Positions 1 through 64,000 of a DNA stretch of 64,000 nucleotides are shown here, one piece after another. This DNA comes from Zootoca vivipara (lineage: Eukaryota). The stretch spans positions 80,848,001-80,912,000 of the forward strand of contig NC_083278.1 in the NCBI RefSeq assembly GCF_963506605.1, given 5' to 3'. The position numbers and the translations under genes are program-made. Each line of letters starts with the position of its first letter. The stretch's first letter is position 1. The notes beneath the pieces are model-generated. The model was not told where the DNA came from. It saw only the letters and a program-made list of their open reading frames with translations, and searched no databases.

Positions 1-2987
1 TAAACTTTAAAAGCAGCTCCTACAGAAATACCATTTAATTCTTACCTGTTTCTAGCTGAGATAGGAAGGTAAAAGGTAACAGCCAAAACACATCAGTTTG
101 TGAAAATCTTGGTTTTTACGGGACAAAATGCTGCCATTCTTTTCCCCCTCATCTGATTTTCTGAAAAGTGACAAATTAAGATAGTTACACAATGATGCAC
201 CACCTCTCAGGTCATAGTGACTTAGTTGCTCTTCCAAGCAGAATGTGCTTAGCACATCTTAGTGCATAAGATAAAGTAGATTTGGGGAGAGTGGGCTGGC
301 TTTATACATGCCTCTAACATATCAGTCATTATTTCTTTTCCCACCCCCACCATTGTGGCATTTTGCCATGCATGGAGTTGCACGTGTGAAGTGCTAGCAT
401 ATTAACGTTTCTGTATTCCATCTCTGCATAAAACTGTAAAGCATATTTGACATTATTCTGAAGGTGGCTGCCTTGCTTGCGTGTAGGGCTTTCCTGGGAA
501 AGCTTCCCTGATTGACCAACATTCCAGTTTCCCGTGTTGGAAACCCTACCCATGAATAAGGCAGCCAGACTAAGGCTGGGTGGGAAATGTGTGTCAGGTA
601 TTATTCACCATCAAGAAGGCCAGGCTTATCTTGTGCTTGGCCCCTTGGCCCTTTGAAACTGGGTGCTTGGAGAGGTATTTATATGTTTCACATGAAACAT
701 GAAATCTAGGCCAGGGAAGAAAAATATTTTTAAAATGCTTAATTAAAACAAAACTTAAGTCAGAACCAAAGATATATTAAAAAGTGTATTTCCACATTAC
801 TTTTTCTTTAATGAACATACATGCTTCATTTTGTACTGAGGGCAAAGCTCCAAGTAACAGACATGTCCAGAAAGAAATACAGTATGTTGTTTTTTAAGTA
901 CTTAAATGAATGGGACATTTATTTTGTTTCTCTTTCTAAATCTTCTTAATTTATGTTCGTCTTCTGAAAGAGAAATCAAACAGCCTGATCTGGATTTCTG
1001 AACTGAATAAATTGAAAGAGACAAAATCCTTGGGTTGTTAGCTTATGCTTTTATCATAAATTATATTAACTAGATTTATATTCCAGTCCTCCAGGGTTTA
1101 AAATAATTGTCATGTTATGGTAGCAGTCAAGGGCATGAACATCGTGATGGCAATAGTCAAAACTTCTTTCTTTAATCAGTATAATATAAATAAATGAGAT
1201 TTTCCCTTATTCATTTTCGTTAGTTGCATTTTAGTTTGCCGCATTCTCCAGAATTAACAAATCCTTAAATGCTATGCTGGTTCCCAATAAAAATGTAGAT
1301 TTGTACATCTCTTGATAATTAGCTATGAATTAAAACAAAGCATGTCACAAAGCATTCATTGTTATGTGAAGAGCTACTTCCCCTTGTCTGGGACATTATG
1401 ATCCTCCATCTGGCCTGAACTCCCATCACCTCATAAAAATCTGCTCTTATTTATCAATATGTGCACAAAATATTAATTTCACTTGGAAAGTCTTTTTTTT
1501 TATTCTCCTAAAAGAAAAGCAATGATGTCTAAGATCAGATGTTCCAACCCAGCTAGGGGCCGCAAACACACACAGAGAGAGCACCTTATCCAATCCAATC
1601 CAACAGTCAGGGATTCACATTCTTAGCTGGTTTTTTTTGTTATTTTAAAATTGCTACTGATGAACTGTTTTGGTAGGTAAGCAAAAGTTAGATACAATCT
1701 TCAACTCTTTCCATGACGAGCAGCTGGTTACGGCAGTCTGTTTCTGTTACCTGGCCACTATGAGCACACTTTCTGGGCTACTGGGTATAGGGCCAGGGCC
1801 CCCAATAGAACTCCAAACAACCCCTAAGATTCCTCAGTGCACAATGAAAGGAATGAATGCACCCACAGCCAAGGTTCAAGATGACTCTCAAAGCAACACT
1901 GGCAGTAAGCTAAGCCAATCAGACGCAACCTCTGGTATTGCAGGGCCAGTGAAACCAACAACAGGGCATGTTGAGAAGGCTTGCTGCTCCGGTATTCTCA
2001 TTGACCCCACAACCCTAAAGCTGGTACCTGAATGGTAGAACTCACTGCTACTTTCGCCCTGGCTCTAGCAATATTTAAAATTAAAATGCTAGGCAGCTGA
2101 AGCCTCACCGGAGCTTGCTAGGACAGCAATTTGCAGAGAGTGTGGGCCAGCAGACTTGCCAACTTGCCTGCCTGCCTGCCTGCAAGACAGGGAAGGAGGG
2201 AGAGCAAAAAGTGTGGTTGCTGTCACTCTTCATTAGCTTTGAGGTAACACTTGCAACATTAAAATGTTAGCTTGGACATTCCTTAGGGTGCCAATCTATC
2301 CTGTATGTAACAGCTACATGAAACCGCTGAGCGGGGTCATCCAAAGTTTTAGAGTGCGTTGTCAGAAATATGCTGACAACACGCAGCTCTACTTCTCCTT
2401 TACATCTGCCGGTGTGGCAGTAGATGTGCTGGACCTTTGTCTTGCCTTGGAAATCGACTGGATGAGAGCCAAAAAACTGAAGCTCAATGCAGATAAGACT
2501 GAGGGACTGTTAGTGGGTGGTTTCCTAGACCAGATGGATGGGAGGTTGCCTGTTCTTGATGGGGTTACACTCCCTCTGAAGGAGCAGGTATGTAGCTTGG
2601 GGGGACTTCTGGATCCATTGCTAACATTTGAGGCTCAGGTGGCCTCAGTGGTGGGGAGTGCCTTCCATCAGCTTTGGCTGGCGACCCAGCTGCACCACAT
2701 CTGGGCAGGGATAGTCTAATTTCTGTCGTCTATGCTCTGACAACCTCTGAGTTAGATTACTGCAACACGTTATATGTGGGGCTGCCTCTGAAGACAGTTC
2801 AAGAAACTTCAGGTTGTACAGAATTCAGCCGCCAAGTTGCTCACTGGGGCAAGATGGTTTGAGCATATAATGCCAATCCTGGTCCAACTGCGCTGGCTAC
2901 CAATTAGTTTCCAATTCAAAGTGCTGGTTTTGACCTATAAAGCCTTAATCAGCTCAGGATTGCACCTCAAGGACTACTTCTCCTCAT

Positions 2988-3089
2988 GTGTGTATCTGAA
3001 GAAGTGTGCATGCACACGAAAGCTCATACCAATAACAAACTTAGTTGGTCTCTAAGGTGCTACTGGAAGGATTTATTTTTTATATACTT
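2988..3089 (+). mobile_element. Short Penelope-like element terminal fragment nested in L2
   Basis: CTGAAGAAG..CGAAAGCTCA..AATAA..TTGGTCTCTAAGGTGCTAC layout of reptile PLE termini; flanked by a 13-bp near-perfect direct repeat TACTTCTCC(T/C)CAT (2975, 3090). Copy at 41134..41235. Confidence 0.75.
2992..3029 (+). ncRNA. Minimal type I hammerhead ribozyme-like motif
   Basis: GTAT-CTGAAGA-A-GTGTGC/AT/GCACAC-GAAA-GC-TC-ATAC: core, palindromic stem II, AGCT remnant helix III, stem I GTAT/ATAC. Confidence 0.6.
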
Positions 3090-4359
3090 TACTTCTCCCC
3101 ATATGAACAGACCCAGACCCATCTTTGTGGGCCTCCTCCATGGGAGGGCTAAAAGAAACAGGGCTTTTTGCAGTGGTTCCCTGCTTGTAAAATGCTCTCC
3201 ACAGGGCGGCTCACCTGGAGCCGTCATTACATATCTTTAGGCACCAGGAGAAAACATTTCTTTATAACCAGACCTTTGGCTAATTAAACAATCCATGGCC
3301 TTTTAAATATGTTTGTGGGAAGGAGGTTATTGCCTTGTTGTTTTTAGTATATATTTTGTGTTCTCATTTTGTATTTTTATATTATGCACCACCCTGTGAA
3401 CTTTGGATGAAGGGCAGGATACAAATATAATAATAACAACAGCCACAACAACAACACCTCTTTCTCCGGGGTAGAGTCTATCTTGGAAGGATTGATATTG
3501 CTATCTTTGTAAGATGGATGGTGAAACTCAGTTGTTCACTTATCTCAGGGGTGAGACACCTGTGGCTCTCCAGAAGTTGGTTGGACTCCCAGCCAAAATA
3601 AGCAATGGTCAGGCAACTTCGGGAGGAGAATATATTTTCCATACCTGCTCCCAGAGGGGTTCACCAATGAGTTTCATCTTAGCTTCCCCTTCGAAACAGA
3701 TGCATTTCCCAAAGGTTTTATGATGTGCTGAATTCTAGCTGGCTATACAACCACTTGTAAAAATGGCTAAAGGGAGCTCTTTCCCACAAACATGTCTCTG
3801 TCTTGCGTTGCTGCTGCAGCAGCTCTGCTACACAGGGATTTATTTGCTACATTAAAGAAAAGAGGTACATCCAAATCTCAAAGCAACGGATACAGTGGGT
3901 GAGGAGAAGGTGCACTTGGCCGGGCAGACTCATTAAGCAGTGATGCGGTCACCTCATGTTTTTAGGAGCTAGTAGGCAGGCTTCTGGGACGAGCTTGCTA
4001 GGGAAATAGAAAATGAGATAGGAGAACTGAGAGCATGAGGGCATTGTGGAAAAAGTGGTGCGTTAGTGGCAAGGAAATAAAGCATGGATGAGCAGCTAGG
4101 TAAGCACTGGGAAGTCGGAGGTCACCTTGACCAGCCCCCCCCCCCCAAACATGGCAATACCTGTTGCTCAAATGGGTTTGCCTTATGTTATGAAGAGCTG
4201 CTGTTTGAGAAAGACAAGCCAAAGTCTTTGGGGCATTAATTAAATTGCTCTTTTGTATTGGTTGAAGCAGCCTGAAGAGCTTGCCATGAGCTTAGGGAAG
4301 AGGGAGAAGAAGAAAAAGCTTGCTTAAATCTACTTCAAGTTTGGAAGGACACAGGATTG

Positions 4360-4360
<1 letters not shown>

Positions 4361-4404
<44 letters not shown>
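4361..4404. repeat. (CA)22 microsatellite
   Basis: Read directly; same length at 42507..42550. Confidence 0.95.
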
Positions 4405-4406
<2 letters not shown>

Positions 4407-4964
4407 ATACACCTTCTGCTTCTCATACCACTCCCTCAATTAGGTTGTGAAGCATCTCTTCATTTTAAGACATCCTTCACGTATCTTATATTAAAATAGG
4501 TTATTTCTTGAATTAATTAAAAGGGGAAAGTGGGGTGAATTTATAAAGAACAGAGCACATTTAAGTGGCCAACTACATCCAAGCACCTTTTATCCTTACA
4601 GTAAAGCAATTAATCACCATAAACTCATTTTGTCTAAAAGCAGTAGCAATTGATTGTTCCGTTTAAATCACTTTATTGTCCAGTCTGATGTCAGATCACC
4701 TAAATAGACATGCTTATAAATTCCCTGTATGGGAACATTGTATGTTTTGAAGGTTAGTTAGGATGGGAATGTTTTGTGCCAGTTGCTGGCAAGAGCTACA
4801 TCTTTAATTTCTGCAAAAATTATACATCCAAGGTTTATCAAGATGAGTGGCACACATATACGGTAAGAGTCTGAACGGGTGCAGTCACAACCTAAACCAC
4901 AACCTGAATGGGTGAAGTCCACAACCTGGAACGAGATGCACTTAGGATATGTCTTTAATAATAA

Positions 4965-5790
4965 CTAGCTGTACCCAGCCACGTGTTGCTGTGGCTCAGT
5001 CAGGGCCCCTGTTTCCCAGGACAGGCGTATGAGGTAACAACAGACCTCTCTATGTTGTCCCCGGTGGGTGATGTCATCTTCCCCCCCATGTGACATCACC
5101 CTCCACCCCAACCCCCCTCTCCCCCTCCCATACCATATGCATATTTGGGGGAGGGTTGCCCGCTTCCACCGCCGGATCCCGGTGGGTCAGGGGGCAGGCA
5201 AACCAGGTGGAGTTCCATATCAAAGGTGGAAATGGGAAGGGCGGGTGGGAGAGAGAAGGGGAGGCAGTGGCGGCGAAGGGACAGGATCTGGCCCCTGGTC
5301 TCCCAGAAGGAGTTGCCTACCATATGGACATTTGGGAGAGGCCCTGGTCGCTTCCCCCGGAGGATCCCAACGGGCGAGGGGGCAGGCAACCCAACTGCAG
5401 TTCCTTATCGAAGGCGGACATGCCGGGGGGGGGTGAGGCGGTGGTGGCGAAGGGGCAGGATCCGGCCCCCAGTCTCCCAGAAGGACCCGCTGCCCACCCG
5501 CTCCCAGTACCCTTTGCACGTTTGCGCCGGAAGGACACCACTGCGTACCCCAAGGTTTTCCTGGGAGTAAGAAATTTACTATAACTTGTGTTGCTTTGAC
5601 GTCCAACAGATGGCACTATTTTCTCACAAAAACATGTTTTTACTTGTCACAGGTGTGACATCTTTATAATCTAATTATATACAAACACTCCCGTATTTGA
5701 ATGCAATGTTGTGTCAAAATTTCAAAGCAATAAGTCAAGAACTTTTGGAGATTTTTGATTATGTACAAATGGACATTTACATTTTATAGA
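4965..5790 (-). mobile_element. Non-autonomous Helitron
   Basis: On the minus strand: 5' A|TC, 3' CTAG|T, subterminal hairpin AGCCAC..GTGGCT (4977-4996), no TSD. Copy at 43111..43936. Confidence 0.75.
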
Positions 5791-5793
5791 TAA

Positions 5794-6830
5794 CTACCGG
5801 TAGCTGGCCCTGCCACATGTTGCTGTGGAATTGTTTGTTAAATGGCGGGTCAGAGTCCCCCTTCAGATTCCCCAGACCGTCAGAGTCCCCCCTGTGTTGT
5901 TTAGATAGGGGCATACCTGTGTCTCCCCACACTCTGTAGTGACCCATCCCAGGGAAGGTCTTAGTTATCCCTGTCACCTATTGAAAGACCCCCCCCATCC
6001 CAATCAGGGAAGGACTTACCTATCCCTGACCCCTATTTGGCCCCCCCACCGATTGAGGGTAATACGGAGGGGGTGGGGGGGTTGGTGGGTGGTGTTGTAG
6101 AGTGAGGGTAGTATGTAGGTGGTTTGTGGGTCCTGGGCGAGCGGTGTTGTAGAGTCAGGGTAATATGGAGGTGGTTAGGGGTGTCGATGTGGGATTTCTG
6201 TGTGTGTTGGGATGTGGGGGTGGATTGGGGAAGGTGGAAGCTACACAGCGGCTTAGGTCTGTGGTGGTGGGGCGAGGTAGGCCTGAGGCGTCGGAATTGG
6301 AGGGGTGGTCGGGGAGGTGGCCTGGTCCCTGGGGGTGGTAGGATCGGCGGCGGAGGGTCCCGGGAGATGTCGGGATTGGCGGGGGCAGAACCTGTGGGGT
6401 AGGTGGAGGCTACAGAGCGGCTTAGGTCTGAGGTGGTGGGGCGAGGTAGGCCTGAGGCGTCGGAATTGGAGGGGTGGTCGGGGAGGTGGCCTGGTCCCTG
6501 GGGGTGGTAGGATCGGCGGCGGAGGGTCCCGGGAGATGTCGGGATTGGCGGGGGCAGAACCCGTGGGGTAGGTGGAGGCTACAGAGCGGCTTAGGTCTGA
6601 GGTGGTGGGGTGAGGTAGGCCTGAGGCATCGGGATTGGAGGGGTGGTCGGGGAGGCGGCCTGGTCCCTGGGGGTGGTAGGATCAGCGGCAGAGGGTCCCG
6701 GGAGACGGCAGGATCGGCAGGGGCGGAATCCGTGGGGTGGGGTGTGTGTGTGGAGTGGGCTTGGTCAGGGCGGGAAGGGGTCAGTGGTATGTGATCTCCT
6801 GTGCGACCGTGGGTCCCTGGTGAACGGTTA
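5794..6830 (-). mobile_element. Second related non-autonomous Helitron, adjacent to the first (far end unclear)
   Basis: Begins with the same terminus/hairpin (GCTGGCCCTGCCAC..TTGCTGTGG) and shares CAGAGTCCCCCTTCAGA with the 35526 element. Copy at 43940..44976. Confidence 0.6.
6232..6738. repeat. G-rich minisatellite, 3 x 169 bp
   Basis: Units start at 6232, 6401 and 6570. Copy at 44378..44884. Confidence 0.92.
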
Positions 6831-7344
6831 ATGAAGAGGGTTAATGCTCTAGAGTTCAGTCACACCTGGTGGCACTTTTGGATGGCCTCAAGATGTGTCT
6901 GCAAAAAGCAGATAAATCTTCACTCTTGCCTAATGTTCCACTGGGCTACTTAATAGTACTGTATTGCTGAGACTGTCAGTAAACTTTTATTCTGTGATCC
7001 TAAAAAAACAAATAAGCCTTTGCAATCAGAAGTTGCAGCAGTCCTGTACTTTGTGAAATGTTTTTCTTTCTTCTTCTTTGATTAACAATTACATCTGCAA
7101 GCTTTTGTTCACATGAAGCCCCATCACTATTTACTACAGCAGTAGAAAGCTGGCAAATTATTTTAAAGTAAATAAACACAGCTGTAGGAAACATTTCCCT
7201 AGTTTCTTCTACATTCTACAAGCTGGAACTATTTTTTATTCACTCCCCCTCTCCGAATCTCGTTTTAAACATTTTTCTGTCAAATGCACTGAAGTTCAGC
7301 CAGGGAAAAACATAAAACCAGTCTGGAGGAAAAATTGTATAAAT

Positions 7345-7770
7345 TTGCATCTGCAGAGAAAGACTGCAGACAAGCTGGAAAGGATTCAGGAGAGTGTCAC
7401 AAGAGGAACAGGTCTCCAAGGCAAGTTGTGTCAAGACAAGCTGAAGGAACTGGGTCTGTTTACCCTGGAGAAAAGAAGATTAAAGGAAGCATATGCTGGC
7501 AGGTTTCACATATCTAAAGGGATATTTAAAAAGAAGAGAGAAGGAATTGGTACAAATTGCTAATTGCAGCCACTCAGGATAGGACAAAAAGCAAAAAACC
7601 TACAAAAATTAAACTACAGGAAGACAGGTTAAGCATCAAGAGAAAAACATCATTTCTGTAAGCAGTTCAGCAAAGAAGTCAACTACTTAAGCAAATCATG
7701 GGGTCACCTTTCTAGAGATTTCAGTGAAAAAGCTGAACTGGCAACTATTGGTGATGTTCAGACGTATTAG
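7345..7770 (+). mobile_element. Degenerate CR1 LINE 3' fragment
   Basis: DKLERIQ...LKELGLFTLEKRRLK is the CR1 ORF2 C-terminal motif. Copy at 45491..45916. Confidence 0.8.
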
Positions 7771-8929
7771 GTGGAATTCAATGAACAAACATTCCCATCT
7801 GTCCAGCTTGCCAGAGAGAACGATTCCCCCCTCCACTCATTTACTAGTTCTGGGGTTCTCCCGATCCTAGCAAGCCAATTTGAGGGGTACACAGGGAGGA
7901 AAGCTGCATTGCACAAGCAGAAATCCTTCCCCAGGTCTTCCACTGACAGAATCTGGCCCGGAACACTGGTGGTGGTGTTCTGCATGGTCTACTATCAAAG
8001 TCACTCATTCAGTTATTCAGATGTTCCCCATTTTGAAATTTGCAGGTGTAAGAATCCCAAAGTACAGTTCTGTCGCATTGCCTCTTATGGGCCATTCTCC
8101 CTTACTATTCAGTTTCTCTACCGGCATATAGGTGCCTGGATGATTTTTTTCTGAAAGGCAGGGCAGTAAATAATCTAAATAAACATATGTAACTCACATG
8201 AGGCCAGGTTGGCCAGTAGACTGGGTCTCTGGAAAAAAATGTATTCCAGGTTTACTCCTTCATTGGTTCTCAAGTGGGTAAGACCTGATGTACACCTATA
8301 GGTAGACATGGCATCCAGATAATGTCTTTCCATTCATTGCTGGAACCCTTCTTCCTCTGGCTCCTTTTACCTCCTCCAGTCCTTAATGAATAGCAATGCT
8401 GCTGCAATCATCTTCACAGCCTCCTGACTGCGCTTTCTAGGTTAACAACACTGAACTACACTTTGGGGTTATCATACACTGCCTTCCCCCTTCCTTCAGA
8501 AAAAAAATGTTTAACAACACCTGGTTACTTTGCAGGACTCGTGTAAGTACCTACAGAGTCTCAACCACATTCCTGCAGTATGGGTCATAGCTGCCAAGTT
8601 TTCCCTTTTCTCGCGAGGAAGCCTATTCAGCATAAGAGAAAATCCCTTTAAAAAAGGGATAACTTGGCAGCTATGGTATGGGTACAATGGTGGACTTTTA
8701 ACCTGCACTGGCATTTTTTAAATGTAATTTTTAAAATGTTTACAAAATCAGAAGAAAATCACACAGAGAGAAAGAATAGGTTAGAAAGATAATGGAGAAA
8801 GCGGATAGAGGAAAGTTTTTCTCCCTGTCTCATAATACTAGAACTAGATGGAGCGACGCCCCTAAGAAAAAAGGTTGCAACATTTAGGACTTTAAAGTTT
8901 AGAACAAAGGTCGCTGATAGGCAACATGA

Positions 8930-9280
8930 CAGAAGTTTCAGGACAGATGAAAAGCAAGGACTTCTTCATGCAGCACACAGTTAAACTAAGGAACTCTCTC
9001 GCACAAGAGGCCACCAACTTAGATGGCTTTAAAAGACGACTGGACAAATTCATGGAGGAGAAAGCTATCAATGGCTGCTGGTCATGATGGCTATACTCTG
9101 CCTCCACAACTGAAGGCAGTAATGCGTCTGAATACCAGCTGCTGGAGACCACTAGAGGGGAGAGTGCTCTTTGGCTTGAATCTTGCTTGAGGGTTTTCCA
9201 CAGGCATCTAGTTGGCCACTCTGAGAACAGATGCTGGACTATAAGGGCCACTGGCCCGATCCAGCAGGCTCTTATGTCCC
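8930..9280 (+). mobile_element. CR1 3' end fragment
   Basis: GATGGCTTTAAAAGA..GACAAATTCATGGAGGA..GGCCCGATCCAGCAGGCTCTTATGT, typical of squamate CR1 3' ends. Copy at 47076..47426. Confidence 0.75.
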
Positions 9281-10858
9281 TACATTCTTCTCTGCTTTCC
9301 TAAATGCCAGTCATTGCTATGACTTCACTAGCTAGAGACACTGAAATATGGGCACAGCCTTATTCTCACTAGGTAAGGACACCACTGTTCTACTGGGAGA
9401 TGTAACTAAAAGTCTTCCTCCCAAATTTAGGTAGAGAGAAGAGGTGTTTGAAATCTGAAGCTGGCTGGCAAGAAGCAGCCTTGAGGTGTAGTTACATTTG
9501 GGGGACTTAATGCCTGCTTTCTTTCCACTTTCTCTACCAATAAATGGTGTTTGTGTGTAACAAAATGTTACAATAATCTAGTAGTTTCTCCTCAGAAAGG
9601 TAAATATGAAAAACTTTCTCTGATATTAGAACTGCTCTGGAAAGCATCCTTGATTTTTTTAGCAACTTTCTGATGAATAGGTTTTTTAAGAGGAGCTTCT
9701 GAAAAGTAGGAGAGTTTTAGATGAAGTCATGGCAATATAGTTTTTTTTTTCAAGGGCATATACTTTACTAATCTATTTCTCCACATTAAGTGGGAGGGGA
9801 GGGAAACACTGCAGTTATTAGCTGAAGGAGAAATAACATTAGCTTTATTTAAAGTTCAATCTAATTTTACCTCATTTTGTTCTCAAACCCATGAAGATTA
9901 CAGATGTTTGGAATTCACTCACGCCCAAAGAAATTATGCAATCTATTTGTGTAAGTATCTAAGGATTAATATTTGTAGGCACTGATCCTTTTTGCGTGAG
10001 TCAAGCTAGTACAGTCGAGAGAAATGGCCAATCTCTTTTTATTTGCTAGTGAAATGTAAGTATAATTAAAGACGGAAGGTTCCAGGAGGTGGACATCTTG
10101 CTCAAACAACTTTCAAACACCCTACCACAGCTTAGAAGTTTTGATAATACTCAGCACAGGTTTTTTTTGACATTGTATTAACTGCCAAGCAGCAAGGCAT
10201 TGCAAGAGCAAGCCCACTGCAAGTTCATTTCCTTTGCTTGTTATTGCCCTTCCCAAGGAGAGGCAGGAAAGACAAAAGCATATCTTCATGATGCAAGAAA
10301 ACTAGACTGAAGAAAATACAGCCTTCCATGGGAGTCAAATAATAGTATTGTTCTTGTGATACGACTCTGGCCCCCTCCTCTATGGCTTCTCTGGTTGCTT
10401 TACAGTGAGCATCAAAGGAAAGAAGAGGGATGCCAAGCAAACTCCCCAGGAGGGCTTTTTCATAGGTCTTCCCTCTTGACCAGGCTACAATGAAGGCAGC
10501 CTCTGAGGGCTATCTTCAAGTGCTATTTGGTAAAGGAACAGAAGAGGATGGTCAAATGAGTATCACACTTGTGATGCAGAAAACATCTACAGCATAAAAA
10601 GCTGGCACAAGACGAGTGGGGAGAGCTCCATGGCCATAGAACCACGATACAGTGCTCCCTTGTGCACTACACCTGACTGACCTAGTGAGTGAGCAAACCA
10701 GGAGAACCTTCAAAACAGATCTTAAGAGTGCAGGCTAGTAAAAAAGCTTGAACTCAATCAATTTGGGTTTTACACTTTGAACTAGTTCTGGAAACACGCC
10801 AATAATCTCACCTTCTCTCACCCCACACACTTAGGATGTTGTAACCTAGATTTGTATT

Positions 10859-10860
<2 letters not shown>

Positions 10861-10905
<45 letters not shown>

Positions 10906-10909
10906 GAGA
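10861..10909. repeat. (TG)n(AG)n compound microsatellite
   Basis: Read directly; same interruption (GC) in copy B near 49007..49055. Confidence 0.9.
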
Positions 10910-16828: not shown

Positions 16829-16832
16829 CCAT

Positions 16833-19592: not shown

Positions 19593-19707
19593 CCCTATTA
19601 TGTTGTTTATAAAAGCCTTATAAGCTACGTTTTGCACATAAACAGTCACTATGTTGTGCTTGGATGATATGCTTGTGACACATATTCCAAAAAGTTATTT
19701 TTCATAT

Positions 19708-49004: not shown

Positions 49005-49051
<47 letters not shown>

Positions 49052-52000: not shown

Positions 52001-55000
52001 CCTATCTACTGTTTGAGCAGTAGCCCCTATACTGATAGCTTCCTGCAAATTTAGCTGATCATCCAACTCTGAGGTGTCTCCCCTTTGCTTTTATCTTCTT
52101 TTTTTTTACTAAACCTAATGAGGCTTTGACAAGTTAAGTGTCTCTGAAGAACTGATATAGATCTCCTTCCTGGCTCTGTGACCTGCACCTTACGATACAT
52201 ATGAGCTACTGAGACATATTGTTACTATTGGTCAACTATTCTTTGAAAAAAACACCGTATTACAGTATTTACATTAATTTAAAATAGTTTTGCTGCGAAG
52301 TATCACCATTTTTACTCCAAAACAAGTCCCCCTCTTCAGTAATACCTCTGTCATAATAAGTGGGTTTGGAATCACAGGCTTAGTTCTGTTTAGAAATAGA
52401 ATGATGCTGCTGTTAGGGGCACAGTTGGAGACAAAATTAAGTACTGTAGTGTGGCTGGGCCAGTAGTCTGACTTAGTACAGAAGTAGCTAGGGTGTGATG
52501 TGCTTAGTTTCACAGAAGTCAAACCTATGTATTATGGAGAAAGATTTGGATGGGACCTAGGGATGGGATCGATTTGGCAATTTTGGTTTCCTCTCTGTTT
52601 CTCACTTTTCCCCATCTTCAGTTCAGTTCCCCACATTTCCACATCAGTTTGTGAATTCTTTTAAAAGAAATTTATCATGAAAATTCATCTGTATTTTAGT
52701 GCAAATTTCTCCTAATACACAAATTTGTATGCAATTTTTGCCAACGTACCAATTTTTGAAAAACATATATAATGTACATTGTGTCTATATATAATTTGCT
52801 AATATCTGCAAATTTTATGTACCCCGGTATATACATTTTTGTACACATTACTTGACTGGAGAACTATGTTTCAAAATTCAGAGAAGTGTAAATTTCAAAG
52901 GATGATTGGCTGTGTTTTGGTTTGATTATTTATTTGGAAAGTGTGCATTTGGTAGGTTCACCTTTAAATGTAAACTGAGTTTAATTTCTTCCCCCATTCC
53001 TGGCAGCACCTCTTTTCTACCACATCAGAGCGATACAGCTCTAGATGCCACTGTTTTCCATTTAAAGTGAGAAATTGTTTTTGCAGCAAGAAACGCACAC
53101 TCTCTTCTCATTTCCATTGCTTAGTATTTTCACAAGTAATATATTAACAACCTGCAAATGAACAAATGAAACGAACAAATGGTGTTAAGAGTACAATCTG
53201 TCCATCTCACGGATGACAGAAAGTCATGACCTTTGCTGCCCTGTAAGATTCTGTTCAAATATAGAAGCATGTCAAAAAAATCACTGCATTCTAAAATTGG
53301 CTATTATATATTTTAAAAAAGAAATAATAGTGCACAATTTGTCCAAGAATGCAGTACACGATTGCCTCTTGGACAAAACACCAATAGCAATTAACATTAA
53401 TAAAGAGTCATAGAGCTCAATGTTAAAACAGCAAGCAATCCCAGCCAAGTTGTAATCATGTCTAATAGCAGAAAGGACATTCAGCTCTCCTCATTTGCCA
53501 AAGACCTTGACAACCTTTATGAAGGACTGTCTTGGAAAAGAGACGGTGACCTCCTTTGTGTTCAAGATTTTTTCTTTCCCCGCCCCCAATGAATATATGG
53601 CTCATTAGTCAATGTTGTAAGACAGCCAACCTTGAGATACACTCATTTAATATGGAGTCAAAACTGTCAACAGAAGGAGGCCCTTGACATCTTCCTGCCC
53701 TCCTTTGGTCCATCAAAAAGGGGAAATAAAGATTTAGATTGATTGATGGGGTTGGCTGAATGTCAATAAAGCTGGCTTCCTGCCAGTGATTATAATTTGT
53801 AGCCCTCATTCCTCAAATAACTTGTGTTTCAGACAAGAAGTTGGCAGGAGACACAGGTCCTGATCCAAGGAGAACAAACCATATACACTAAAGCAGGCTT
53901 TCTTTGTCTATAGCTTGAAATTCAAGGTTGGGGCTTCACAAAACAGAAAAAGGTCACATTGCCAGGCGTGCTTTTGCATGAAATCTCTGGATTGCCAGAG
54001 AATGACAGTCCATCAAGAACTTGCTCTTCAGCCAAAAGTTTTGAAATTCTCTGTGAAAGAGCTGCTAAATAACTAAAGACTGAAGATAAATAACAAGCGG
54101 TTTTAAGACAAAATTCATGATCCTAAAGGAAATAATCGATGTACCAATTTGAGCTGTCTTGTGCTTGTGCTTATGTAGCCAAAACCGGAGCACTGATGCA
54201 CAAAAGTACTAGAAGACTCAAGGTAATGCTGAGGTACACACAAGTACAGGGGTGAAAATGTACAGTGCAAGGGTGAAAATTAAAATGGGAACTCCAAAAT
54301 AATTCCATGCATAATTCCAAGGCATGAGAGATTGGAGAGCGAGGGAATGACAACTGGGTGGGAAGGGGAAATAGAATAAAGAGGTTGGATATATGATCAA
54401 TACACACACACACCCTGGCAATCAGAGATAGCTACTCATTCTCAGGCAACTGGAACGTCTTTTTAAAGCAGTCAGCAAGCCTTCTGCTATAGCATTCCAT
54501 AGGCTCTAAATCAATGCAGAGTACTATCAATAACTGTACTTAAACCACAGATCAGCAATCCTGGATCACATCTTTGAACCTTGGTTATCACCTGTGTTTA
54601 TCTGAGGGAGACAGTTACCTTCAAGCATATTATGACTGGTGGACCTTACTATATCAAACAAAACATCACTTGCAGGTCCTGCAATGTAATTTACATTGCT
54701 GAGTGGAAATGTCTATGGTGTCATGTTCAGTATGTGCGTAAAACAACAACTAATCTACACACGTATTTTAGGAAGCACAAATCTACAGTCTTAATGAAAA
54801 ATTGGAACAATCAATTGCAAATCAGTTCAATTCAGATGACCACAACTGAGCCGTCTCTGTAACAGAGATGCCACCTGATACAAAACCACTGGAAGTAACT
54901 GAAAACTTGTGGAGACCTAGACTTGATACCTTACTACCATATGGCCTAAACCCTGGGAACAGAACCAAAGATGCCCATTGTTGGAGATTCATTCCCCGTG

Positions 55001-58000
55001 TCTGCAGTCATGGGATTGTTGTCTATCACATGACGGTGTATGTTGCGACACATTTGGACATTCCAAGATGGTGACAGGCTATCTAGGATGCCGGAGACGT
55101 TCGGAGGGCTGGACTTTGCTCTCTCCGACCCCCACATGAAGTGGGAGGCACTGGTTCCTGTTCTGGCGGGAGGACTCTCCAGAACGGAAGGAAGAGAAGG
55201 GGAGTGACTGTGACATCATCCCAACCATCAATGCAACCAGCAGGTGGCACTGCTGAGGTTGAAACAGTGGAAATTTTGTCATGTGAGAAGTTTGGACTGA
55301 GTCCAAATGTCAGGAACATTTGCAGCATTTCCAACAGGCAACATGAAGCAAGGCCAGGGATGCGGAGCTGCAGTGCAGAGATGGTGCCCAGCTGTTCCAG
55401 TGCTGAGGTGCAAGAATCTTTTGTGCAAGATTCTGAGGTGATGGCACACCTTTGTGGAAGATGGAACTGATTCACCACATGTACACTACAGAAGGAACTG
55501 CTCTACCAGTCGAGTGGAGACTCCTTGGAGGTGCATAACACCTGGACCGTGGAACTGAAAAGCTGTAACATTGTGGTGTCTAGTGTGTTTTTCATTCCAG
55601 ATCGAGTTGCTTAGTTCTGTTACGCATGCTCTGCAGATCCGTAAGTGTGCTGATGTTTCTTGGCATCAGTCGCTGTGGTGTTCGGGCTGAAGAAAGCTTT
55701 TGAAGCTCCCGAACGATCGACCAGGAGGGAGGAAACATGCCAGTTGGGCATGTGTCTCTGCCAGGGTCCTACTCGTGTGTAGGAGATCTTAACACCATGT
55801 CCATGTAAGATAGCTTCGGTTGCAAACACACAGATGTACAAATCATTATGATTTATTTTATTTATAAATCATTTCCTTTGAAGCATCTCAAAGTGATGAC
55901 CCAATACATTAAAAATATATAGAAAAGAATGCATACAGAAAAAATAATTACAAGAATAAAACAGTTTAAAAATACACATATTTTTAAAAAGTTCAAATTC
56001 AATAGAGATACAGATTGGAGTAAAAACCTCCACTTGTAAAGGTTATTGAAAGAGGAAAGTCTTCAACAGGCAAATGCATATGTGAGCTATCAAGGGGCTC
56101 CAGCAGATGTAAGGGGGGGTACTAAAACATGGAACCAGCACTAAGTATAGGTTAGGTATCTTTTAAAAGTACATTGAACGGTAAGTACTCTTGATTGTAC
56201 TTGAATGACTACCTATTTTGATTTTAAATTTATCCCTTAAATTAGAATCTCATTATTTCCTTCTCTTTAGGAAAGCCAGAGGCCACACTATTATTTTTTA
56301 GAGCAGGAAACCCATACATGCTCCAATGAAATAGTATTCATTTGGGCATTTCATTTAATTGCAAATGGTTTAATTAGAATATTCCATTACTTATCTTATT
56401 AGTATTCATGTAGACTGATTCCCTATTACAGTGTTTTTCAACCTTTTTTGGGCAAAGGCACACTTGTTCCATGAAAAAAATCACGAGGCACACCACCATT
56501 AAAAAAGTTAAAAAATTTGAGAAACGCTGGCCTAGGGGAGGGGAATGTCTGTGCCACTAGCTGTGCGGAGCCTCCATTTACAGCAGCAGTCTATCCCCAA
56601 TAATTTAGGTGCCAGGGGTTAAACAAGTGGAGACAAGGCATTTTCATAAGAACCTAATGAGAGCCCGCTGGAGCAGGCCAGTGGCCCACCTAGTCCAGCA
56701 TCCTGCCCTCACAATGGCCATCCAGAGGCCCCATTGGGAAACCCACAAGCAGGATTCAGGCACAAGACTACTTTTCCCCTCCTGTAGTTTCTGGCACCTG
56801 GCATCCAGAAACACTGCTGCTTCCAAATGTGGCAGGGCAGAGGAGAGCCCTCAGCAGGTCACCCTCTCCTCCACGAAACCCACCGATGTTGGTGGTCATC
56901 ACTGCCTCCTGTGGGAGGGAGTTCCTAAGTTTAACAATGTGCTGCAGTTAGGAAGTCCGTCCTTTTACCTTCACTTCCAGTGCCAGGACCTCTGACCTGC
57001 TCTGCGTGCCCTTCTCACGTGCACTGCAAGGTTTGCTCCCTTAAGGGAGAGGATCTAGGGGAGAAAGGGGGTGCTTCCCTCCTGCACCCCCACCCTAGCC
57101 CCCCACCATCCCTTGTCTCTCCTCCTCTGCACCTTTCCAACACCCTCCACCCACCCAAGGTCCCTTTATTATTGAACCTGGTGGTCATCTGCTCACCCTA
57201 CTGCTCAGCCATTCTGCCCCCTCCAGCGAGGAAGATGAGTCCATTACTGACCTCCCCTTCCGCCCGCCCCCACTAGCGTTATTAAGCCTCTCTAGGAATT
57301 GGATTCTTTGGATTTAACCATTATAGATCCACTTGAAATTCCCTTTTCCCCCACCCCCACAAGTGGTGCCTCCCGGGCCGAATTTCAGGGCAAGAAATTA
57401 ACTTTACCTTTTCACGCAGCTTGCTACATTTGTACGTAAGTGAAGAAAGAATGCACATATCGAGTCAGCAAGAGGAGTGAGAGCGAGACAAACAGCAGCA
57501 GCAGCACCCGCCGGCCGCCTCTCACGTCCGAGGCCGTGGTGGTGGCTGTTGAGAGCTGCGCTCGCCCCGCGTCGTGACCCGGACGGCTTCCTTTCTGGCG
57601 GGTCAGCGCTCCCTAATGGCGGCTGCCAGGCACGTGACAAGGCAGCATATTGCCCTTCTCGTCGTCGCACGTCGCGTCACACCAGCCAGCGTCTTGCGGC
57701 ACACTAGTGTGCCGCGGAACAGCGGTTGAGAAACGCTGCCCTATTATGTTGTTTATAAAAGCCTTATAAGCTACGTTTTGCACATAAACAGTCACTATGT
57801 TGTGCTTGGATGATATGCTTGTGACACATATTCCAAAAAGTTATTTTTCATATAGGTAAAGGGATCCCTGACCATTAGGTCCAGTCGTGACCGACTCTAG
57901 GGTTGCGCGCTCATCTCGCATTATTGGCCGAGGGAGCCGGCGTATAGCTTCCAGATCATGTGGCCAGCATGACAAAGCCGCTTCTGGCAAACCAGAGCAG

Positions 58001-58812
58001 CACATGGAAACGCCGTTTACCTTCCCGCTATAGCGGTTCCTATTTATCTACTTGCATTTTGACGTGCTTTCGAACTGCTAGGTTGGCAGGAGCTGGGACC
58101 AAGCAACGGGAGCTCACCCCGTCACAGGGATTCGAACCGCCGACCTTCTGATCAGCAAGCCCTAGGCTCAGTGGTTTAACCCACAGCGCCACCTGGGTCC
58201 CTATTTCTCCCTCCCCATATAAATCCTACAAAAGTTGGATTATCACCACCTACTTCCAAAGGGGTTGTCTGTTCAGCAGCAGAAGAAAAATTCTAGAGAT
58301 GCTTGTGAAATACATTCACTGGTGTGGCAGTATGATGTTAATGACTGGATACTATGAACTGCTTAGAAAACAGAAATGCAGGAGTGGTCCCAATGGTATT
58401 TCAATGGTTCAGCAGAGTATTTTGATGTTGCTGTACCAGTATCAGACACCAGATGGGACCTCTGCCACATTAAATATCAATGAGTGAAAAGGGAGGTGGT
58501 AGAGGAGTAGTGGCACACAGGTGGGGTGGAGCTGCCCTTCTAACACTAGCCCCATTGATGCTTAGCAGGACGGGTCTGAATGGTAGTAAAGCTGGGGCTG
58601 CGACGGTGCCAGTGAGAACACAAGATTGGCGGTGATCCTACTGATGCAATCACATGACCATGATCTCGCCACTGTTCTGTTATTATTATTATTATAATTA
58701 ATTAAATTTATATACCGCTCTATAACTTCAGGTCTCAGGGCGGTTCAACCGTTCCAACCATGTCCAAGTAAACAGCTGTCACACCAGTGTCATGAGGTTG
58801 TCTATGCCTCAC

Positions 58813-58860
<48 letters not shown>

Positions 58861-61165
58861 GAGAGGAGTGGGGACACCACACTTACGGAAAAACTCTTGA
58901 AACAACTGCAACAATTATGTGGTGCAACACTCACTGTGATAATTAGGGTAGACATGTTACGGTGCCATTAATACACCATCCTATTTTCTCAACACCAGAA
59001 TAAGGTTGATCTCCAGGTATAGCGTAAATGGCTCTGAACTCTTAGAACAGGCTGAAAAATAATTTTAGAAATAAACAGAACGTGTTCGTCAGTACCAACT
59101 TTTCCCATGAGCAGCAGTAGAACTGCTGTGATGTGCACTTTTATTTCCCCATGTATTTTAGATTTTTGTTTCAATTCTGTTGGGTTGCTAATTTAGTTAT
59201 TTCATGAATTATTTGTTTTAGCTTGCTATTGTTATATATATATTTGTATGAAAGCCACTCTAATAATGCCTGTTTAAGTATACTATTTTAATTAATTAAT
59301 TAATCAATCAATCAATCTTTCTAGTCCTTGTGGCTGCAATAAGGAGTTTGGGTGGTGGAAGAGGAAATGCAGGAAGAGAAGACCCTAGAATTTGAAACAA
59401 TACATTATAATCTGGTTGACTTTCCAGTAAGGTATTTACATGTACAGTATTGCTCTCCTAAGCCTTGTCCATATCAATGTTCTTGGCTGTCACATCCTGC
59501 TCCTCTACTGTCCACTCTGCTCTGTTCTGAGGCTTTGATGTGTCTACAATGAAAAAAAGGGAACTGCACAGGGCTGCCCCAATCATGAGAGGTAATGATG
59601 AGACCACTTAGATAGCCCGGTGTGTGTGTGTGTGTGGCAAATTGGCACATGCCTTGGCCCTTCATTCACATCACTATCGGCCACCAATGCTGCTGATGCT
59701 GCCAGTGCCATAACCCACTGACCTGGTGAGGCAAGAAGTGCCCTTTCCACCTCTTCCTGCTTTACTCTGAGGAGGGACTCACCTGGCCCTTCCTCAGAGC
59801 AAAGCAATAAAGAGGTGGTGTAGGGAGTACTGGATAAACCATTTGTGCCACTGCTAATGTGGTGGTGGCCAAAAAAAAAAAGTCAGCAAGAAGGAATGGT
59901 TGGCAGGGTAGAAGATGACAGTGGTGCCACAAGGAGAACTGGAGAGAAGCAGAGCCACTAACCACCCCCAGCCACACAATGCTTGCACTGCCCCCCCATG
60001 ACAATCTGGGAAAGCAATGGACTTTCCATTCCGTGGCTCTGGAGCTGCTACCAAAAAGAAAAGCAGCAACCCAACAGAATTACACACACACTTAAGTTCA
60101 CTGATTGCAAAAAGGATCGGCATCTTTTGATTGGATTGTGGACAGTCAGTGTACAGGTGAAACCCGAAAAATTAGAATATCGTCGAAAAGTTCATTTATT
60201 TCAGTAATTCAACTTAAAAGGTGAAACTAATATAGGAGAAACTTATGACATGCAAAGTGAGATATGTCAAGCCTTTATTTACTGTACTGTATTGTAATTG
60301 TGATGATTATGGCATACAGCTGAAGAAAACCCCACATTCACAATCTCAGAAAATTATAGTGTTTAGCTACTCAATCCATAACACCTGCAAAGGGTCCCTG
60401 AGCCTTTAAATGCTTCAGTAGGAATCACAATCATGGGAAAGTTTTCGACAATATTCTAATTTTTCGAGTTTCACCGATATATGAGAGGGGTGTGCTTCAC
60501 ACTAGGCAATGATATCCTGCCTCTTTCTCTTTGCAAAGTGTCCATCCTTAGGAAGGGAAAGTGCCAAAGTTGCCTTATGCAGACGCCAAGAGCAAAACAC
60601 TTGCCTCACCTGAACATATATATTTTAATTGATACATACATATGTATGTATACACACACACACACACAACTTTAAAAGGACAAAATGGTGCCTCCCACTC
60701 TCTTTCCCCATATAGAAGCCAACTGGAGTAGCAGTTTAATTTTAAGTTAGCACTGGGGAGAGGACACTTTATCCTGCCTTGAAGGAAGGCAGTCGGACTT
60801 AAAGAAGGAACCCACCTGCTGCTTAGCGCTCCAAATGCCTGCCTGCTGCTCCTCCTCAGCACCTCCTGCCCGAGAAACCACTTTGCCCAGGCCAATGGTA
60901 GGGCCGACTCTGCCTATGCCCTCTTTGCTCCCCTCTACACTGGTAGGCAGACACAGATATTATTGTAGGTAGGGCTTTCTTTTCAGTGGGAACTCACGGG
61001 AGCTCAGTTCCAGGACCTCTCAGGTGGGAGCCATTGCCATTCTAAGAGAACAGGTGTTCATGGTGAGTTCTGGCACCTCCTTTTCTAGGGGAAAAAAAGC
61101 ACTGATTGTAGACACCTTGAACTCATACGCCTTTTAATGAGAAAAACTAATGCACCTACAACCCG

Positions 61166-62146
61166 TACCGCCTTGTTTGCAAGGCTTCGTATATAATAAT
61201 CGGGTTTAGGGCTCAGGTCGCACTGAATATTTCCCGCCGGCGCCAGCCGCACGGCACGAGCCGCAAGCGGTGCCTCGAGTTGCCGCGCCAACATCCCTCG
61301 TGCGCGTCTACACACTACTTGGGAGTCGCCCCACGCAACCGAAACGTGCCAGCTCGAGCCGCACAGGGATCCGCGTTCCTTGCCACATGCGGCATGCGCG
61401 CGCAATTCCCGGCCCGGGAATAGGTTTTCCGCCAGCACCTGACGCCGAACAGCGTCGTTGCGCATGCGTTGCTGCCCTCTCTCCCACCGACCGACCCGCC
61501 CACCTCTCCCAGGTTGCTTAGCGCGACTGGCATGGCGGCTCCCTAAGGCCGCTTAGTGCACATGGGTTAGACTCGCCACGCGTCAAAAAAAAAAAAGGGA
61601 AAGGAAAGGAAGCGGCTTCTCCTCCGTCTCGTCTGTGCAGCAGGAGCGCGCGGCTGCCTCCGAGAAAATGCGGGCGTTGGAGCGTGTGTTGCTGAGGGGC
61701 TTCCCCAGCGCAGCGGAGTCACCGCGGTGGAAGCAGAACGAGGCGGCTTCGGCTGCAGGTAAGGCTTCGGCGAGGCAGAGCCAGCCTTCGTCGCTTATCC
61801 TCAGGCGCCCGTTGCCTCTCGCCCTGGCAACGGGATGTGAGCCGTGCCAAAGCTCATGGTAGGGCAGAGGGAGGAAGGGGAGGCGGCGCTTCATCTGCCG
61901 GCAGGGCCCCCTTTCCTTCGTCCTGCCTCCCCTTCCCCTGGTACCTACTTGAGTGGGGAGTGGGAACAGGGGGCGGCGTGTCCGCGTATGTCTCCCAAAG
62001 GGAGTAGTCGCTGGGGTTATTTATTTGCGGGGTTGCTGCTGCTGCAACCCTGGCAGTCGTTGGAGGTGCCAAGGGTATAGTGCTGGAGGCAATTGTCAGT
62101 GATGCCTGCTTGTGTTCCGGGATGGATAGGAGACAAGGAGTCATGG
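61166..62146 (+). promoter_or_regulatory. TTC27 CpG-island promoter, copy B
   Basis: Identical to copy A. Confidence 0.85.
61668..61758 (+). CDS. TTC27: TTC27 coding exon 1, copy B (presumed intact gene)
   Basis: Identical to 23522..23612. Confidence 0.9.
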
Positions 62147-63819
62147 GGGCGTGGAGAGGCAGTGAGTCTGACCCCCAACAATCAGTGGATCTCATTGTCA
62201 CTTTTTCTCCTCTCCCCCGAAAAATAAAATGGGGGTTTACTTGAGCTTCAGTAGTGGGTACGAATGTCGCTCGTTATGATAAAGACTGCCCCTGGGATGC
62301 TGGGGCACGACGTTGCTTCGTAAATGATTGAACTGCCAAGTTTTTTGCTAACCTTTATTATAACTTAAGTATGTCATGCTATTTCGTGCTTACTGTCTGA
62401 CTGTTACAGATAGGCTCCGAGAAGTCGCAAAAGCCTTTAGTGATCCTCCTCTCGGTACTGTTGTTGCCACAGAGACTATTTCCAGTTCAGAATTTTCCTG
62501 ATCATGGAATGCAGTAGCCACGTATTAACAGTGCAATATTTTGTAAACCTCCTCATGAGATGCGCCAGCATGACAAGTTGCTGTTAACTGGTGTTTTGAG
62601 CAGTGCTGTTTTTCTAGAAAAAAAATGCCAGAACCCACCATGAGCACCTCTATCATTCTCTAGAATGGCAATGGCGCTCACTTGAGAGGTGCCAGACAGA
62701 TATTCCTTAACTTTGGTTATGCTATTAGAGGTCTGTAAAGGTGACAGTAGATATCAGGTTGGATTTCTAACATAGAGGCCCAGTGTGGATTATCATTCAA
62801 GGTTTCAGAAACCTTGGTTTATGAGCGTTTGGCCCAAGCACTCTTTCCCTGCCTCTTCCCTTCTCCCTTTGCACACTGGCTTCTGTGTGAAATCCAGTTC
62901 TGTAGCTACTCTCCTAAACTACAGTTCCCTGCTGCATCCAAGCTGGGAAACTTTGCACAGGAGCCAACTCCTAAGGGCCAAGGTCCCTTTGCCCCTCCCA
63001 AAATAAAATATTTGAGGGGGCCAGGGGTCCCCAAAGTTGATGAACATTGCCATTCAAATGGTGCGAGTGCACAGTGTATTGTGATCAATTATGTGAGTAG
63101 GGCTTACCTACCCCCTTCCAAATATTGTATTCAAGTTGGCACCCTTGGGCCCAAGTACATTGCCTTAGAGCACAGTGACCCCCCCTTTTGGGCTATGGCA
63201 CTCCCTCTTAACTAAGATTCATTTGTCACCCATATATTTAGATGTCAACATAAGACATATTTATTTTTTCCAGGGTTTTGGTAGCTAGCTGCATGTTTTA
63301 ACAGAGAGGGTTTTTTTGTCCACTACTTTGTGTCTTAAAGGTTGTTCCTAATCTGTCAATGTTTTAAATGACTGTTCTATGATGCTTTGTGTGTGTGTTG
63401 TTAGCCACCCCGGGGTCTTCAGGGAAGGACAACATATAGTAACGATAGTTAGATATAATACACGTTGCTATCTGAAAGAGGGTCTTGTAGGACCATCAAG
63501 TATAGAATCTAAAATTACCTAGCTGCACCACTGCTTGCAAAGAATGTGTGAGGGTTAAGAGCAGCTGAACAGCTGGTTCTTGTTTACAAATTTCAATCTC
63601 TTTAAAATCTTTGTTGTAAGCACACCATAAGAGTCCAGTATGAATGTTGTTTTAATTTAGTAAATGTCAATGGGTATTTTTCTAAAGCAACCCAAAGTCT
63701 TTTCCTCTGATATGAGATGTCTTAGAATACAACACTATAATTGTATAGGATTAAGTCTCTTTTAAGTAAGGTACGATTGCCCCGAGTATACATTAAATAA
63801 AATGTATGTTTTATTTTAG

Positions 63820-64000
63820 AGAGTGGGTCCTTGTTGCAGTTGCTGTTGGAAGGGAATTATGAGGCCATTTTACTAAGTAAAGCAGTCCAGGATATTTTCA
63901 GAGCACCTGAAGTAGCAGAAGAGGATACCATTGCCAGCTACTTAGAAAAGCAGATTCAAGATTATCTGGACTGTTCTTCTGTAGATACGGATCCTATGGA
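63820..64000 (+). CDS. TTC27: TTC27 coding exon 2, copy B (runs off the window end)
   Basis: Same acceptor and frame; continues ...VDTD-P-M-GA(x), compatible with human ...DLDTTER near the end of exon 2. Confidence 0.92.

What the first reader, a model, noticed from the sequence alone, without database searches (positions are those of the whole stretch)
1..63993. Apparently perfect 38,146-bp tandem duplication spanning the BIRC6 3' end and TTC27 5' end
Seen: 25.8 kb recur at a constant offset with no net indel. The (CA)22 tract and the other simple repeats I compared are unchanged. Gene order reads TTC27(5') - BIRC6(3') - TTC27(5'), whereas the established vertebrate order is BIRC6 then TTC27. 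Inference: a very young tandem duplication that leaves one intact BIRC6 upstream and one intact TTC27 downstream, or a false duplication. I compared by eye and via the ORF track, so isolated SNPs could be missed.
Basis: partly seen in the sequence, partly recalled or inferred. Interest (0 to 1): 0.9.

Follow-up and report, generated by a model that had tools for sequence, protein, structure and literature searches.

The report
Young 38-kb BIRC6–TTC27 tandem duplication
The perfect repeat is real in the sequence, and indirect read evidence suggests a very recent 38-kb tandem duplication carried by some animals of the species and not others, rather than an assembly error; it leaves both genes intact, so it is an ordinary copy-number variant.

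Summary
Window 1-25847 equals 38147-63993 with 0 mismatches at offset 38,146, and there is no N.

The unit carries:
- the last two coding exons of BIRC6, matching human residues 4754-4857;
- about 31 kb of intergenic DNA;
- the TTC27 CpG promoter, exon 1 and all but about the last 12 nt of exon 2.

Contigs from four public runs of the same species were laid on the junction. In two samples (X15, X18), whole contigs end exactly at 25847 and others start exactly at 25847. That is the de Bruijn signature of a branch out of the right breakpoint and into the left one. In the other two (X17, X1), one contig runs through 25847 from a different, native left flank. The junction therefore seems to exist in reads and to be polymorphic. 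No listed record bridges it with 31 or more letters on each side, so this support is indirect.

The breakpoints share one base. The right one lies in a unique exon, so this is non-homologous repair rather than NAHR. The GATC occurs on one side only.

No in-frame TTC27-BIRC6 fusion arises by normal splicing.

Real young CNV about 0.75, artefact about 0.15. Interest is low to moderate.

The parts
1..25847 (+). Distal 25,847 bases of duplication copy 1. Copy 1 starts about 12,299 bases left of the window.
   Evidence: Identical to 38147-63993 with 0 mismatches.
25846..25848 (.). Duplication junction, right breakpoint joined to left breakpoint: ...TACGGATC|ACAATGCAG... The C at 25847 is a 1-base microhomology, so the join can be placed at 25846/25847 or at 25847/25848.
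   Evidence: Searches give the sequence. In one search, X15 and X18 contigs end and start exactly at 25847. X17 and X1 contigs reach 25847 from another left flank and match the stretch from 25847 on, not from 25844.
25848..63993 (+). Complete second copy of the 38,146-bp unit.
   Evidence: Period 38,146. The unit ends where identity to 25848 onwards stops (63994).
23000..23800 (+). TTC27 CpG-island promoter, copy 1. The same island in copy 2 lies at 61146-61946.
   Evidence: GC 0.59-0.67 and CpG observed/expected 1.08-1.33 over 23001-23600, falling to 0.64 at 23601-23800.
23522..23612 (+). TTC27 exon 1 coding part, copy 1. ATG at 23522, 30 codons plus 1 base, donor GT at 23613.
25674..25847 (+). 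TTC27 exon 2, copy 1, cut by the junction about 12 nt before its normal end, so its donor site is lost. Read-through adds 17 codons and then a stop at 25898-25900.
   Evidence: The exon-2 piece hits proteins named TTC27. The relative P0001 continues ...DTDPMER.
28487..28621 (+). BIRC6 penultimate coding exon, extra copy. 45 aa, phase 0 to 0.
   Evidence: 100% identical to human BIRC6 residues 4754-4798 of chain 8atu_A, E 1.8e-24. AG/GT splice sites present.
30599..30778 (+). BIRC6 last coding exon with its TGA stop, extra copy.
   Evidence: Aligns to human BIRC6 4799-4857, the C-terminus, E 7.4e-24..
61668..61758 (+). TTC27 exon 1 coding part, copy 2, belonging to the presumably intact TTC27.
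   Evidence: Offset 38,146 from 23522-23612.
63820..64000 (+). TTC27 exon 2, copy 2, running on natively past the breakpoint (GGATC|CTATGGA = ..D P M E).
   Evidence: The continuation matches ...DTDPMER of relative P0001.

Best explanation
This is a real, very young, head-to-tail tandem duplication of a 38,146-bp segment, and it is polymorphic in the species. The left breakpoint lies in the BIRC6 intron before the penultimate coding exon. The right breakpoint lies in TTC27 exon 2, about 12 nt before that exon's donor site. The two ends were joined with one base of microhomology and no flanking homology. That points to end-joining or replication template switching (inferred), not unequal crossing-over between repeats.

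The expected result is: complete BIRC6; then a TTC27 promoter, exon 1 and truncated exon 2; then the junction; then an orphan copy of the last two BIRC6 exons with the 3' UTR and intergenic DNA; then complete TTC27. The dosage of complete genes is unchanged.

The middle TTC27-promoter unit can only give a truncated or out-of-frame product. Exon 1 ends in phase 1 and the BIRC6 exon starts in phase 0. Reading through exon 2 reaches a stop after 17 codons.

Shown here: the identity, the gene content, the splice phases, and the contig breaks at the breakpoints. Inferred: that a junction contig exists, the repair mechanism, and the intactness of the outer gene copies.
For:: 25,847 bp identical at offset 38,146, with no N.

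One search, table 8, runs X15 and X18. X15 record 12 (960 nt, whole contig) and X18 record 28 (488 nt, whole contig) end exactly at 25847. X15 record 13 (1399 nt) and X18 record 29 (1281 nt) begin exactly at 25847. Elsewhere, neighbouring contigs overlap by 24-30 bases, as expected for k = 31 (for example records 27 and 28). The 1-base overlap here therefore implies a short intermediate junction unitig between an out-branch at the right breakpoint and an in-branch at the left one.

One search, runs X17 and X1. X17 record 19 (3517 nt) and X1 record 5 (2749 nt) pass 25847 unbroken, coming from 2118 and 1354 letters that are unlike the stretch. That is the native allele without a junction.

One search, table 2. 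In bin 25853-26019 there is extra depth of +4.0 in X15 and +7.6 in X18, about 24 bases' worth of overlapping unitigs. X17 and X1 show exactly 0 extra depth there. X17 and X1 also have no contig laid just left of 25847 (X17 25018-25846, X1 25626-25846). This is expected if their contig continues into the native right flank, which the tool appears to leave out in all four runs.

X15, X17 and X18 show no letter differences from the window. X1 shows 16 substitutions and 4 indels in 5 kb. Haplotypes in this species therefore can differ by about 0.4%, yet the two copies differ by 0.

together with the exon location: there is no repeat homology at the breakpoints.
Against: - No listed record bridges 25847/25848. 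A 59-base junction unitig could not meet the tool's criterion of 31 letters on each side anyway.
- 33,686 pieces were not shown.
- The contigs give no copy number, and the window holds no single-copy flank for a depth comparison.
- It is not known which sample the assembly came from, or whether S11 and S13 are unrelated animals.
- A perfect 38-kb repeat is longer than most accurate long reads, so the copy number in the assembly is itself uncertain.
- The right breakpoint abuts GATC (GGATCC natively). Chance gives this only about 2% of the time.
Confidence: 0.75

Rival explanations
1. False (homotype) duplication made by the assembler or by curation. One 38-kb segment was laid down twice, for example through an untrimmed contig overlap or a loop traversed once too often. 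The animal would have a single copy.
For: Zero differences over 25.8 kb, including three long dinucleotide microsatellites, is what a re-used consensus would give. False duplications are common in vertebrate assemblies (PMC9516828). Depth could not be tested. No bridging record was listed.
Against: There is no gap or N between the copies, whereas gaps are a main hallmark in PMC9516828. An artefact junction would not exist in reads. Yet in X15 and X18, contigs built from reads break at exactly the two breakpoint bases, and in X17 and X1 they do not.
Confidence: 0.15
2. There is a real extra copy, but the arrangement differs from the one assembled. It could be three or more tandem copies, a dispersed insertion of the segment elsewhere, or a heterozygous event placed in a collapsed consensus.
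For: The branch signature shows only that the right breakpoint has a second continuation and the left breakpoint has a second predecessor. It does not by itself prove that the two are joined to each other, and it does not give the number of copies. A rough depth reckoning gives a junction share of about 0.2 in X18 and about 0.45 in X15 (table 2).
Against: The assembly itself reads the right breakpoint directly into the left one. A dispersed copy would need the assembler to invent exactly that join.
Confidence: 0.07
3. Restriction and ligation chimera. Two GATC-ended fragments (BAC or cosmid partial digest, or a 3C-type ligation) were joined in vitro and carried into the assembly.
For: The junction reads GGATC|A and the native site is GGATCC. 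The unit is of cosmid or fosmid insert size.
Against: The native left flank in X17 and X1 matches the junction only from base 25847 (one C), not from 25844. The left partner therefore has no GATC. A fill-in ligation would give GATCGATC, which is absent. A single chimeric molecule would not produce graph branches in two whole-genome runs.
Confidence: 0.02

Closest known systems
Young polymorphic tandem segmental duplications (copy-number variants) formed by non-homologous end joining or by microhomology-mediated template switching (FoSTeS/MMBIR). This comparison rests on my own knowledge of the literature.
   Same: Head-to-tail copies, a single novel junction, 1-bp microhomology, no repeat homology at the breakpoints, breakpoints inside two neighbouring genes, and apparent presence in some individuals and absence in others.
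   Different: The two copies are letter-perfect even at long microsatellites, so the event is unusually recent, or the assembly consensus has made them alike. The mechanism is inferred from the junction sequence only.
False duplications in vertebrate genome assemblies (Ko et al. 2022, Genome Biol 23:205, PMC9516828)
   Same: Two near-identical neighbouring copies on one scaffold create an apparent partial gene gain. A zero-difference pair would fall in their 'homotype' class.
   Different: There is no gap between the copies and no haplotype-specific differences, and read-derived contigs of two samples branch at exactly the breakpoints. Depth and read-pair discordance, their other criteria, could not be tested here.
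Human 2p22.3 copy-number variants covering BIRC6 and TTC27, listed in CNV surveys (for example PMC4074351 and PMC3606459; seen in the hit list only, not read)
   Same: The same pair of neighbouring genes lies in a duplicated interval.
   Different: Those are large, rare events in patients of another species. Nothing links them to this event.

Membership tests
Real tandem duplication (CNV) | Two head-to-tail copies at a constant offset, with one novel junction | tested here: met
   offset 38,146, 0 mismatches over 25,847 bp. Junction at 25847/25848.
Real tandem duplication (CNV) | The junction is present in sequencing reads independent of the assembly | tested here: inconclusive
   whole contigs of X15 and X18 end and start exactly at 25847, with extra depth in the next bin. 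X17 and X1 run through from the native flank. No listed record bridges the junction with 31 or more letters on each side.
Real tandem duplication (CNV) | About double read depth over the unit relative to single-copy flanks | not testable with these tools
   Only contigs were laid, and contig depth is not copy number.
False duplication (criteria of PMC9516828) | A gap, or a depth gap, between the duplicated pair | tested here: not met
   No N anywhere in the window.
False duplication (criteria of PMC9516828) | Heterotype class: haplotype-specific differences between the copies | tested here: not met
   0 differences in 25,847 bp, although another animal (X1) differs from the window by about 0.4%.
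False duplication (criteria of PMC9516828) | Half or very low read depth, and discordant read pairs | not testable with these tools
   No raw reads were laid. Contigs carry no pair information.
NAHR-mediated duplication | Homologous repeats at both breakpoints | tested here: not met
   The right breakpoint lies in the unique TTC27 exon 2. The native left flank is unlike the sequence left of the junction. No homology was found between the 1 kb either side of the junction.
Restriction-ligation chimera | The same restriction site at both joined ends | tested here: not met
   GATC is found only on the right-breakpoint side. The native left flank matches from 25847 only.
In-frame chimeric (fusion) gene | Compatible splice phases between the 5' partner and the 3' partner | tested here: not met
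   TTC27 exon 1 ends in phase 1 and the BIRC6 penultimate exon starts in phase 0. Exon 2 has lost its donor, and read-through stops at 25898-25900.

The most novel reading that the evidence does not exclude
The duplication is a gene birth caught in the act. The extra TTC27 promoter would drive a new transcript that uses a weak cryptic phase-0 donor just past the junction (GT at 25865-25866, TTT|GTATAT). That donor would splice in frame onto the last two BIRC6 exons. The product would be a small protein of about 200 aa, made of the TTC27 N-terminus plus the BIRC6 C-terminal tail, and it would segregate in the population.
Probability: 0.07. Interest if true: 0.45.

Novelty: new member of a known kind. 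Interest (0 to 1): 0.25.

Why it matters
The main consequence is for annotation and for use of this reference. Gene finders may report a partial extra BIRC6, a truncated extra TTC27 or a chimeric model here, and read mappers will give zero mapping quality across 76 kb. If the variant is real and segregating, it is a clean, datable example of a non-homologous tandem duplication with both breakpoints inside genes. It could serve as a population marker and as a small case study of how promoter-plus-exon fragments get placed next to foreign 3' exons. It does not change the dosage of either complete gene, so a phenotype is not expected.

Tried and rejected
1. GATC / BamHI ligation-artefact idea. 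Rejected because the native left flank shares only one base with the junction.

2. NAHR. Rejected; the right breakpoint is exonic.

3. Looking for the junction-crossing ORF, or native versions of the exon-2 ORF, in the 5.8-billion-protein collection, so as to trace other contigs. Only relatives at 88% identity or less were found and none from this species, so this route gave nothing.

4. ESM Atlas search for the TTC27 exon piece. No usable hit.

5. Pfam on the TTC27 exon pieces and on intergenic ORFs. Only a weak, sub-threshold RVT_1 hit at 2264-2719.

6. Rfam and tRNA scans of the unit. Nothing found.

7. Literature search for a known BIRC6-TTC27 duplication. Only human, buffalo and pig CNV or circRNA lists came up, nothing on this event.

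8. Depth test. Not possible, because the laid stretch lies wholly inside the unit and only contigs were available.

9. Earlier scan notes searched for other false duplications in this genome. None were recorded.

Spliced models were searched exon by exon only. Contigs that contain the native right flank seem to have been left out silently.
Full report
**Observation**

A direct comparison of the window with itself at offset 38,146 gives 0 mismatches and 0 indels over bases 1-25847 versus 38147-63993. The match ends at 25848 versus 63994, and the window has no N. Tandem Repeats Finder lists the same (CA)22.5, (GA)20 and (AG)20 tracts and the same 169-bp x3 array in both copies. A script confirms they are letter-identical.

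One limit applies. Only the distal 25,847 bases of the 38,146-base unit are seen twice. The first 12,299 bases of copy 1 lie left of the window.

**Gene content (all on the + strand)**

- BIRC6 penultimate coding exon, 28487-28621. It has an AG acceptor and a GT donor and encodes 45 aa. These are 100% identical to human BIRC6 residues 4754-4798 of chain 8atu_A (E 1.8e-24).
- BIRC6 last coding exon, 30599-30778. It encodes 59 aa followed by TGA and aligns to residues 4799-4857, the C-terminus. No earlier BIRC6 exon is visible between 25848 and 28486. The left breakpoint therefore lies in the intron before the penultimate coding exon.
- TTC27 promoter and exon 1. A CpG island lies at about 23.0-23.8 kb. 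The exon 1 coding part is 23522-23612, which is 30 codons plus one base, with the donor at 23613.
- TTC27 exon 2. It starts at 25674. Its translation finds proteins that their sources name tetratricopeptide repeat protein 27, from Apaloderma, Castor and Polyodon, aligned at their N-termini.
- Native end of exon 2. The closest relative's ORF continues ...DTDPMER and then ends. Copy 2 in the window continues GGATC|CTATGGA, which reads D P M E. The right breakpoint therefore lies about 12 nt before the normal end of exon 2, and the junction copy has lost that exon's donor.

**The junction**

The junction reads ...GTAGATACGGATC|ACAATGCAGAC. No homology links the kilobase on either side of it, and the right breakpoint is in a unique coding exon. 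Unequal crossing-over between repeats is therefore excluded.

**Read evidence**

The run search found the stretch in several samples of one species, called organism A. Logan contigs of four runs from four samples and two studies were laid on 23348-28347.

- X15 (sample S11) and X18 (sample S13). A whole contig ends exactly at 25847 (records 12 and 28) and another whole contig starts exactly at 25847 (records 13 and 29).
- What that pattern means. Elsewhere in the same table, adjacent contigs overlap by 24-30 bases, as expected for a k = 31 graph (for example records 27 and 28). A 1-base overlap means the two contigs are not direct neighbours. An out-branch sits at the right breakpoint and an in-branch at the left one, with a short unitig of about 59 bases between them. 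That is the expectation when both the junction and the native flanks are present in the reads.
- X17 (sample S12) and X1 (sample S1). A single long contig (record 19, 3517 nt; record 5, 2749 nt) reaches 25847 from 2118 or 1354 letters that are unlike the stretch, and it continues unbroken to the right. That is the native left flank with no branch.
- Depth table. Bin 25853-26019 has extra depth in X15 (+4.0) and X18 (+7.6), about 24 bases' worth of overlapping unitigs. It has exactly none in X17 and X1.
- Hole in X17 and X1. Neither has a contig laid just left of 25847: the hole runs from 25018 in X17 and from 25626 in X1, up to 25846. This fits if their contig continues into the native right flank. 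That flank seems to be left out in all four runs, since the tool warns that some records are filtered silently.

The support has limits. No listed record bridges the junction. 33,686 pieces were not shown. The support is specific but indirect. Depth as copy number could not be used.

**What the same table rules out**

- The native left flank matches the junction from base 25847 only, a single C. The left partner therefore has no GATC.
- X1 differs from the window at 16 substitutions and 4 indels in 5 kb. Two haplotypes laid side by side could be expected to differ, yet the copies differ by 0. X15, X17 and X18 carry the window's haplotype, so this argument is weak for that population.

**Comparison with false duplications**

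Ko et al. (PMC9516828) list four criteria:
- half or very low depth;
- gaps between the pair;
- discordant read pairs;
- single-copy k-mers for the heterotype class.

Gaps and haplotype differences were tested here and are absent. Depth and read pairs could not be tested.

**Age**

With no difference in 25,847 bp, the 95% upper bound is about 5,800 generations at a mutation rate of 1e-8 and about 58,000 at 1e-9. Identical long microsatellites point to the low end, which is an inference from their generally high mutation rates. Consensus polishing could also have made the copies alike.

**Consequences**

The geometry predicts one complete BIRC6 ending in copy 1, left of the window, and one complete TTC27 starting in copy 2.

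- Exon 1 ends in phase 1 and the BIRC6 exon begins in phase 0, so direct splicing is out of frame, with a stop after about 18 codons.
- Reading through exon 2 meets a stop at 25898-25900.
- Only a weak cryptic phase-0 donor at 25865-25866 could give an in-frame product. That product would lack most of the UBC core and every other BIRC6 domain.
- No RNA run was found to hold the stretch.

**Verdict**

| Reading | Probability |
|---|---|
| Real, very young, polymorphic tandem duplication made by non-homologous joining | about 0.75 |
| Assembly artefact | about 0.15 |
| Real extra copy in another arrangement or copy number | about 0.07 |
| Restriction-ligation chimera | about 0.02 |

It is a new instance of a well-known kind of variant. 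It matters mainly for annotation and read mapping in this reference.

Noticed in passing
window 28024-28347 (same element at 66170+ would lie outside the window): An extremely abundant interspersed repeat lies just upstream of the BIRC6 penultimate exon. Summed contig word depth is 0.3-2.5 million there, against about 25-60 for unique sequence in the same runs (table 2). Many variant joints and loose ends occur at 28101-28287.
   Followed up: no
window 6226-6738 and 44372-44884: A G-rich 169-bp tandem repeat of 3.0 copies at 94% identity. GC skew in that 2-kb bin is +0.28, with long open frames on both strands.
   Followed up: no
window 30053-30391, 34254-34617, 57851-58193 (= 19705-20047): Three copies of an interspersed repeat of about 340 bp (SINE-like), 77-86% identical and all in the same orientation. 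ARAGORN finds no tRNA-like head.
   Followed up: partly
window 27141-27860: A GC-rich stretch that is open in several frames on both strands. It is moderately repeated in the genome, with contig depth of about 650-1,860 (800-4,600 in X15 and X1) in bins 27189-27355 and 27690-27856. It lies in the BIRC6 intron between the junction and the penultimate exon.
   Followed up: no
window 37285-37670: A cluster of 16-bp and roughly 110-bp direct repeats whose translation reads ...FASVYER..., at 87-94% identity between units.
   Followed up: no
window 2264-2719: A decayed reverse-transcriptase fragment of a LINE. The Pfam RVT_1 hit is weak (E 0.0013) and below the gathering score.
   Followed up: partly
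window 23469-24544: In run X18 the contig over the TTC27 promoter and exon 1 has depth 109, against 55-62 for its neighbours. The other three runs show no such doubling (table 8). This is unexplained.
   Followed up: no
window 63989-63994 (native) and 25843-25847: The right breakpoint falls inside a BamHI site (GGATCC) of the intact copy, so the junction reads GGATC|A. This is probably coincidence, with a chance of about 2%, because the left partner has no GATC.
   Followed up: yes
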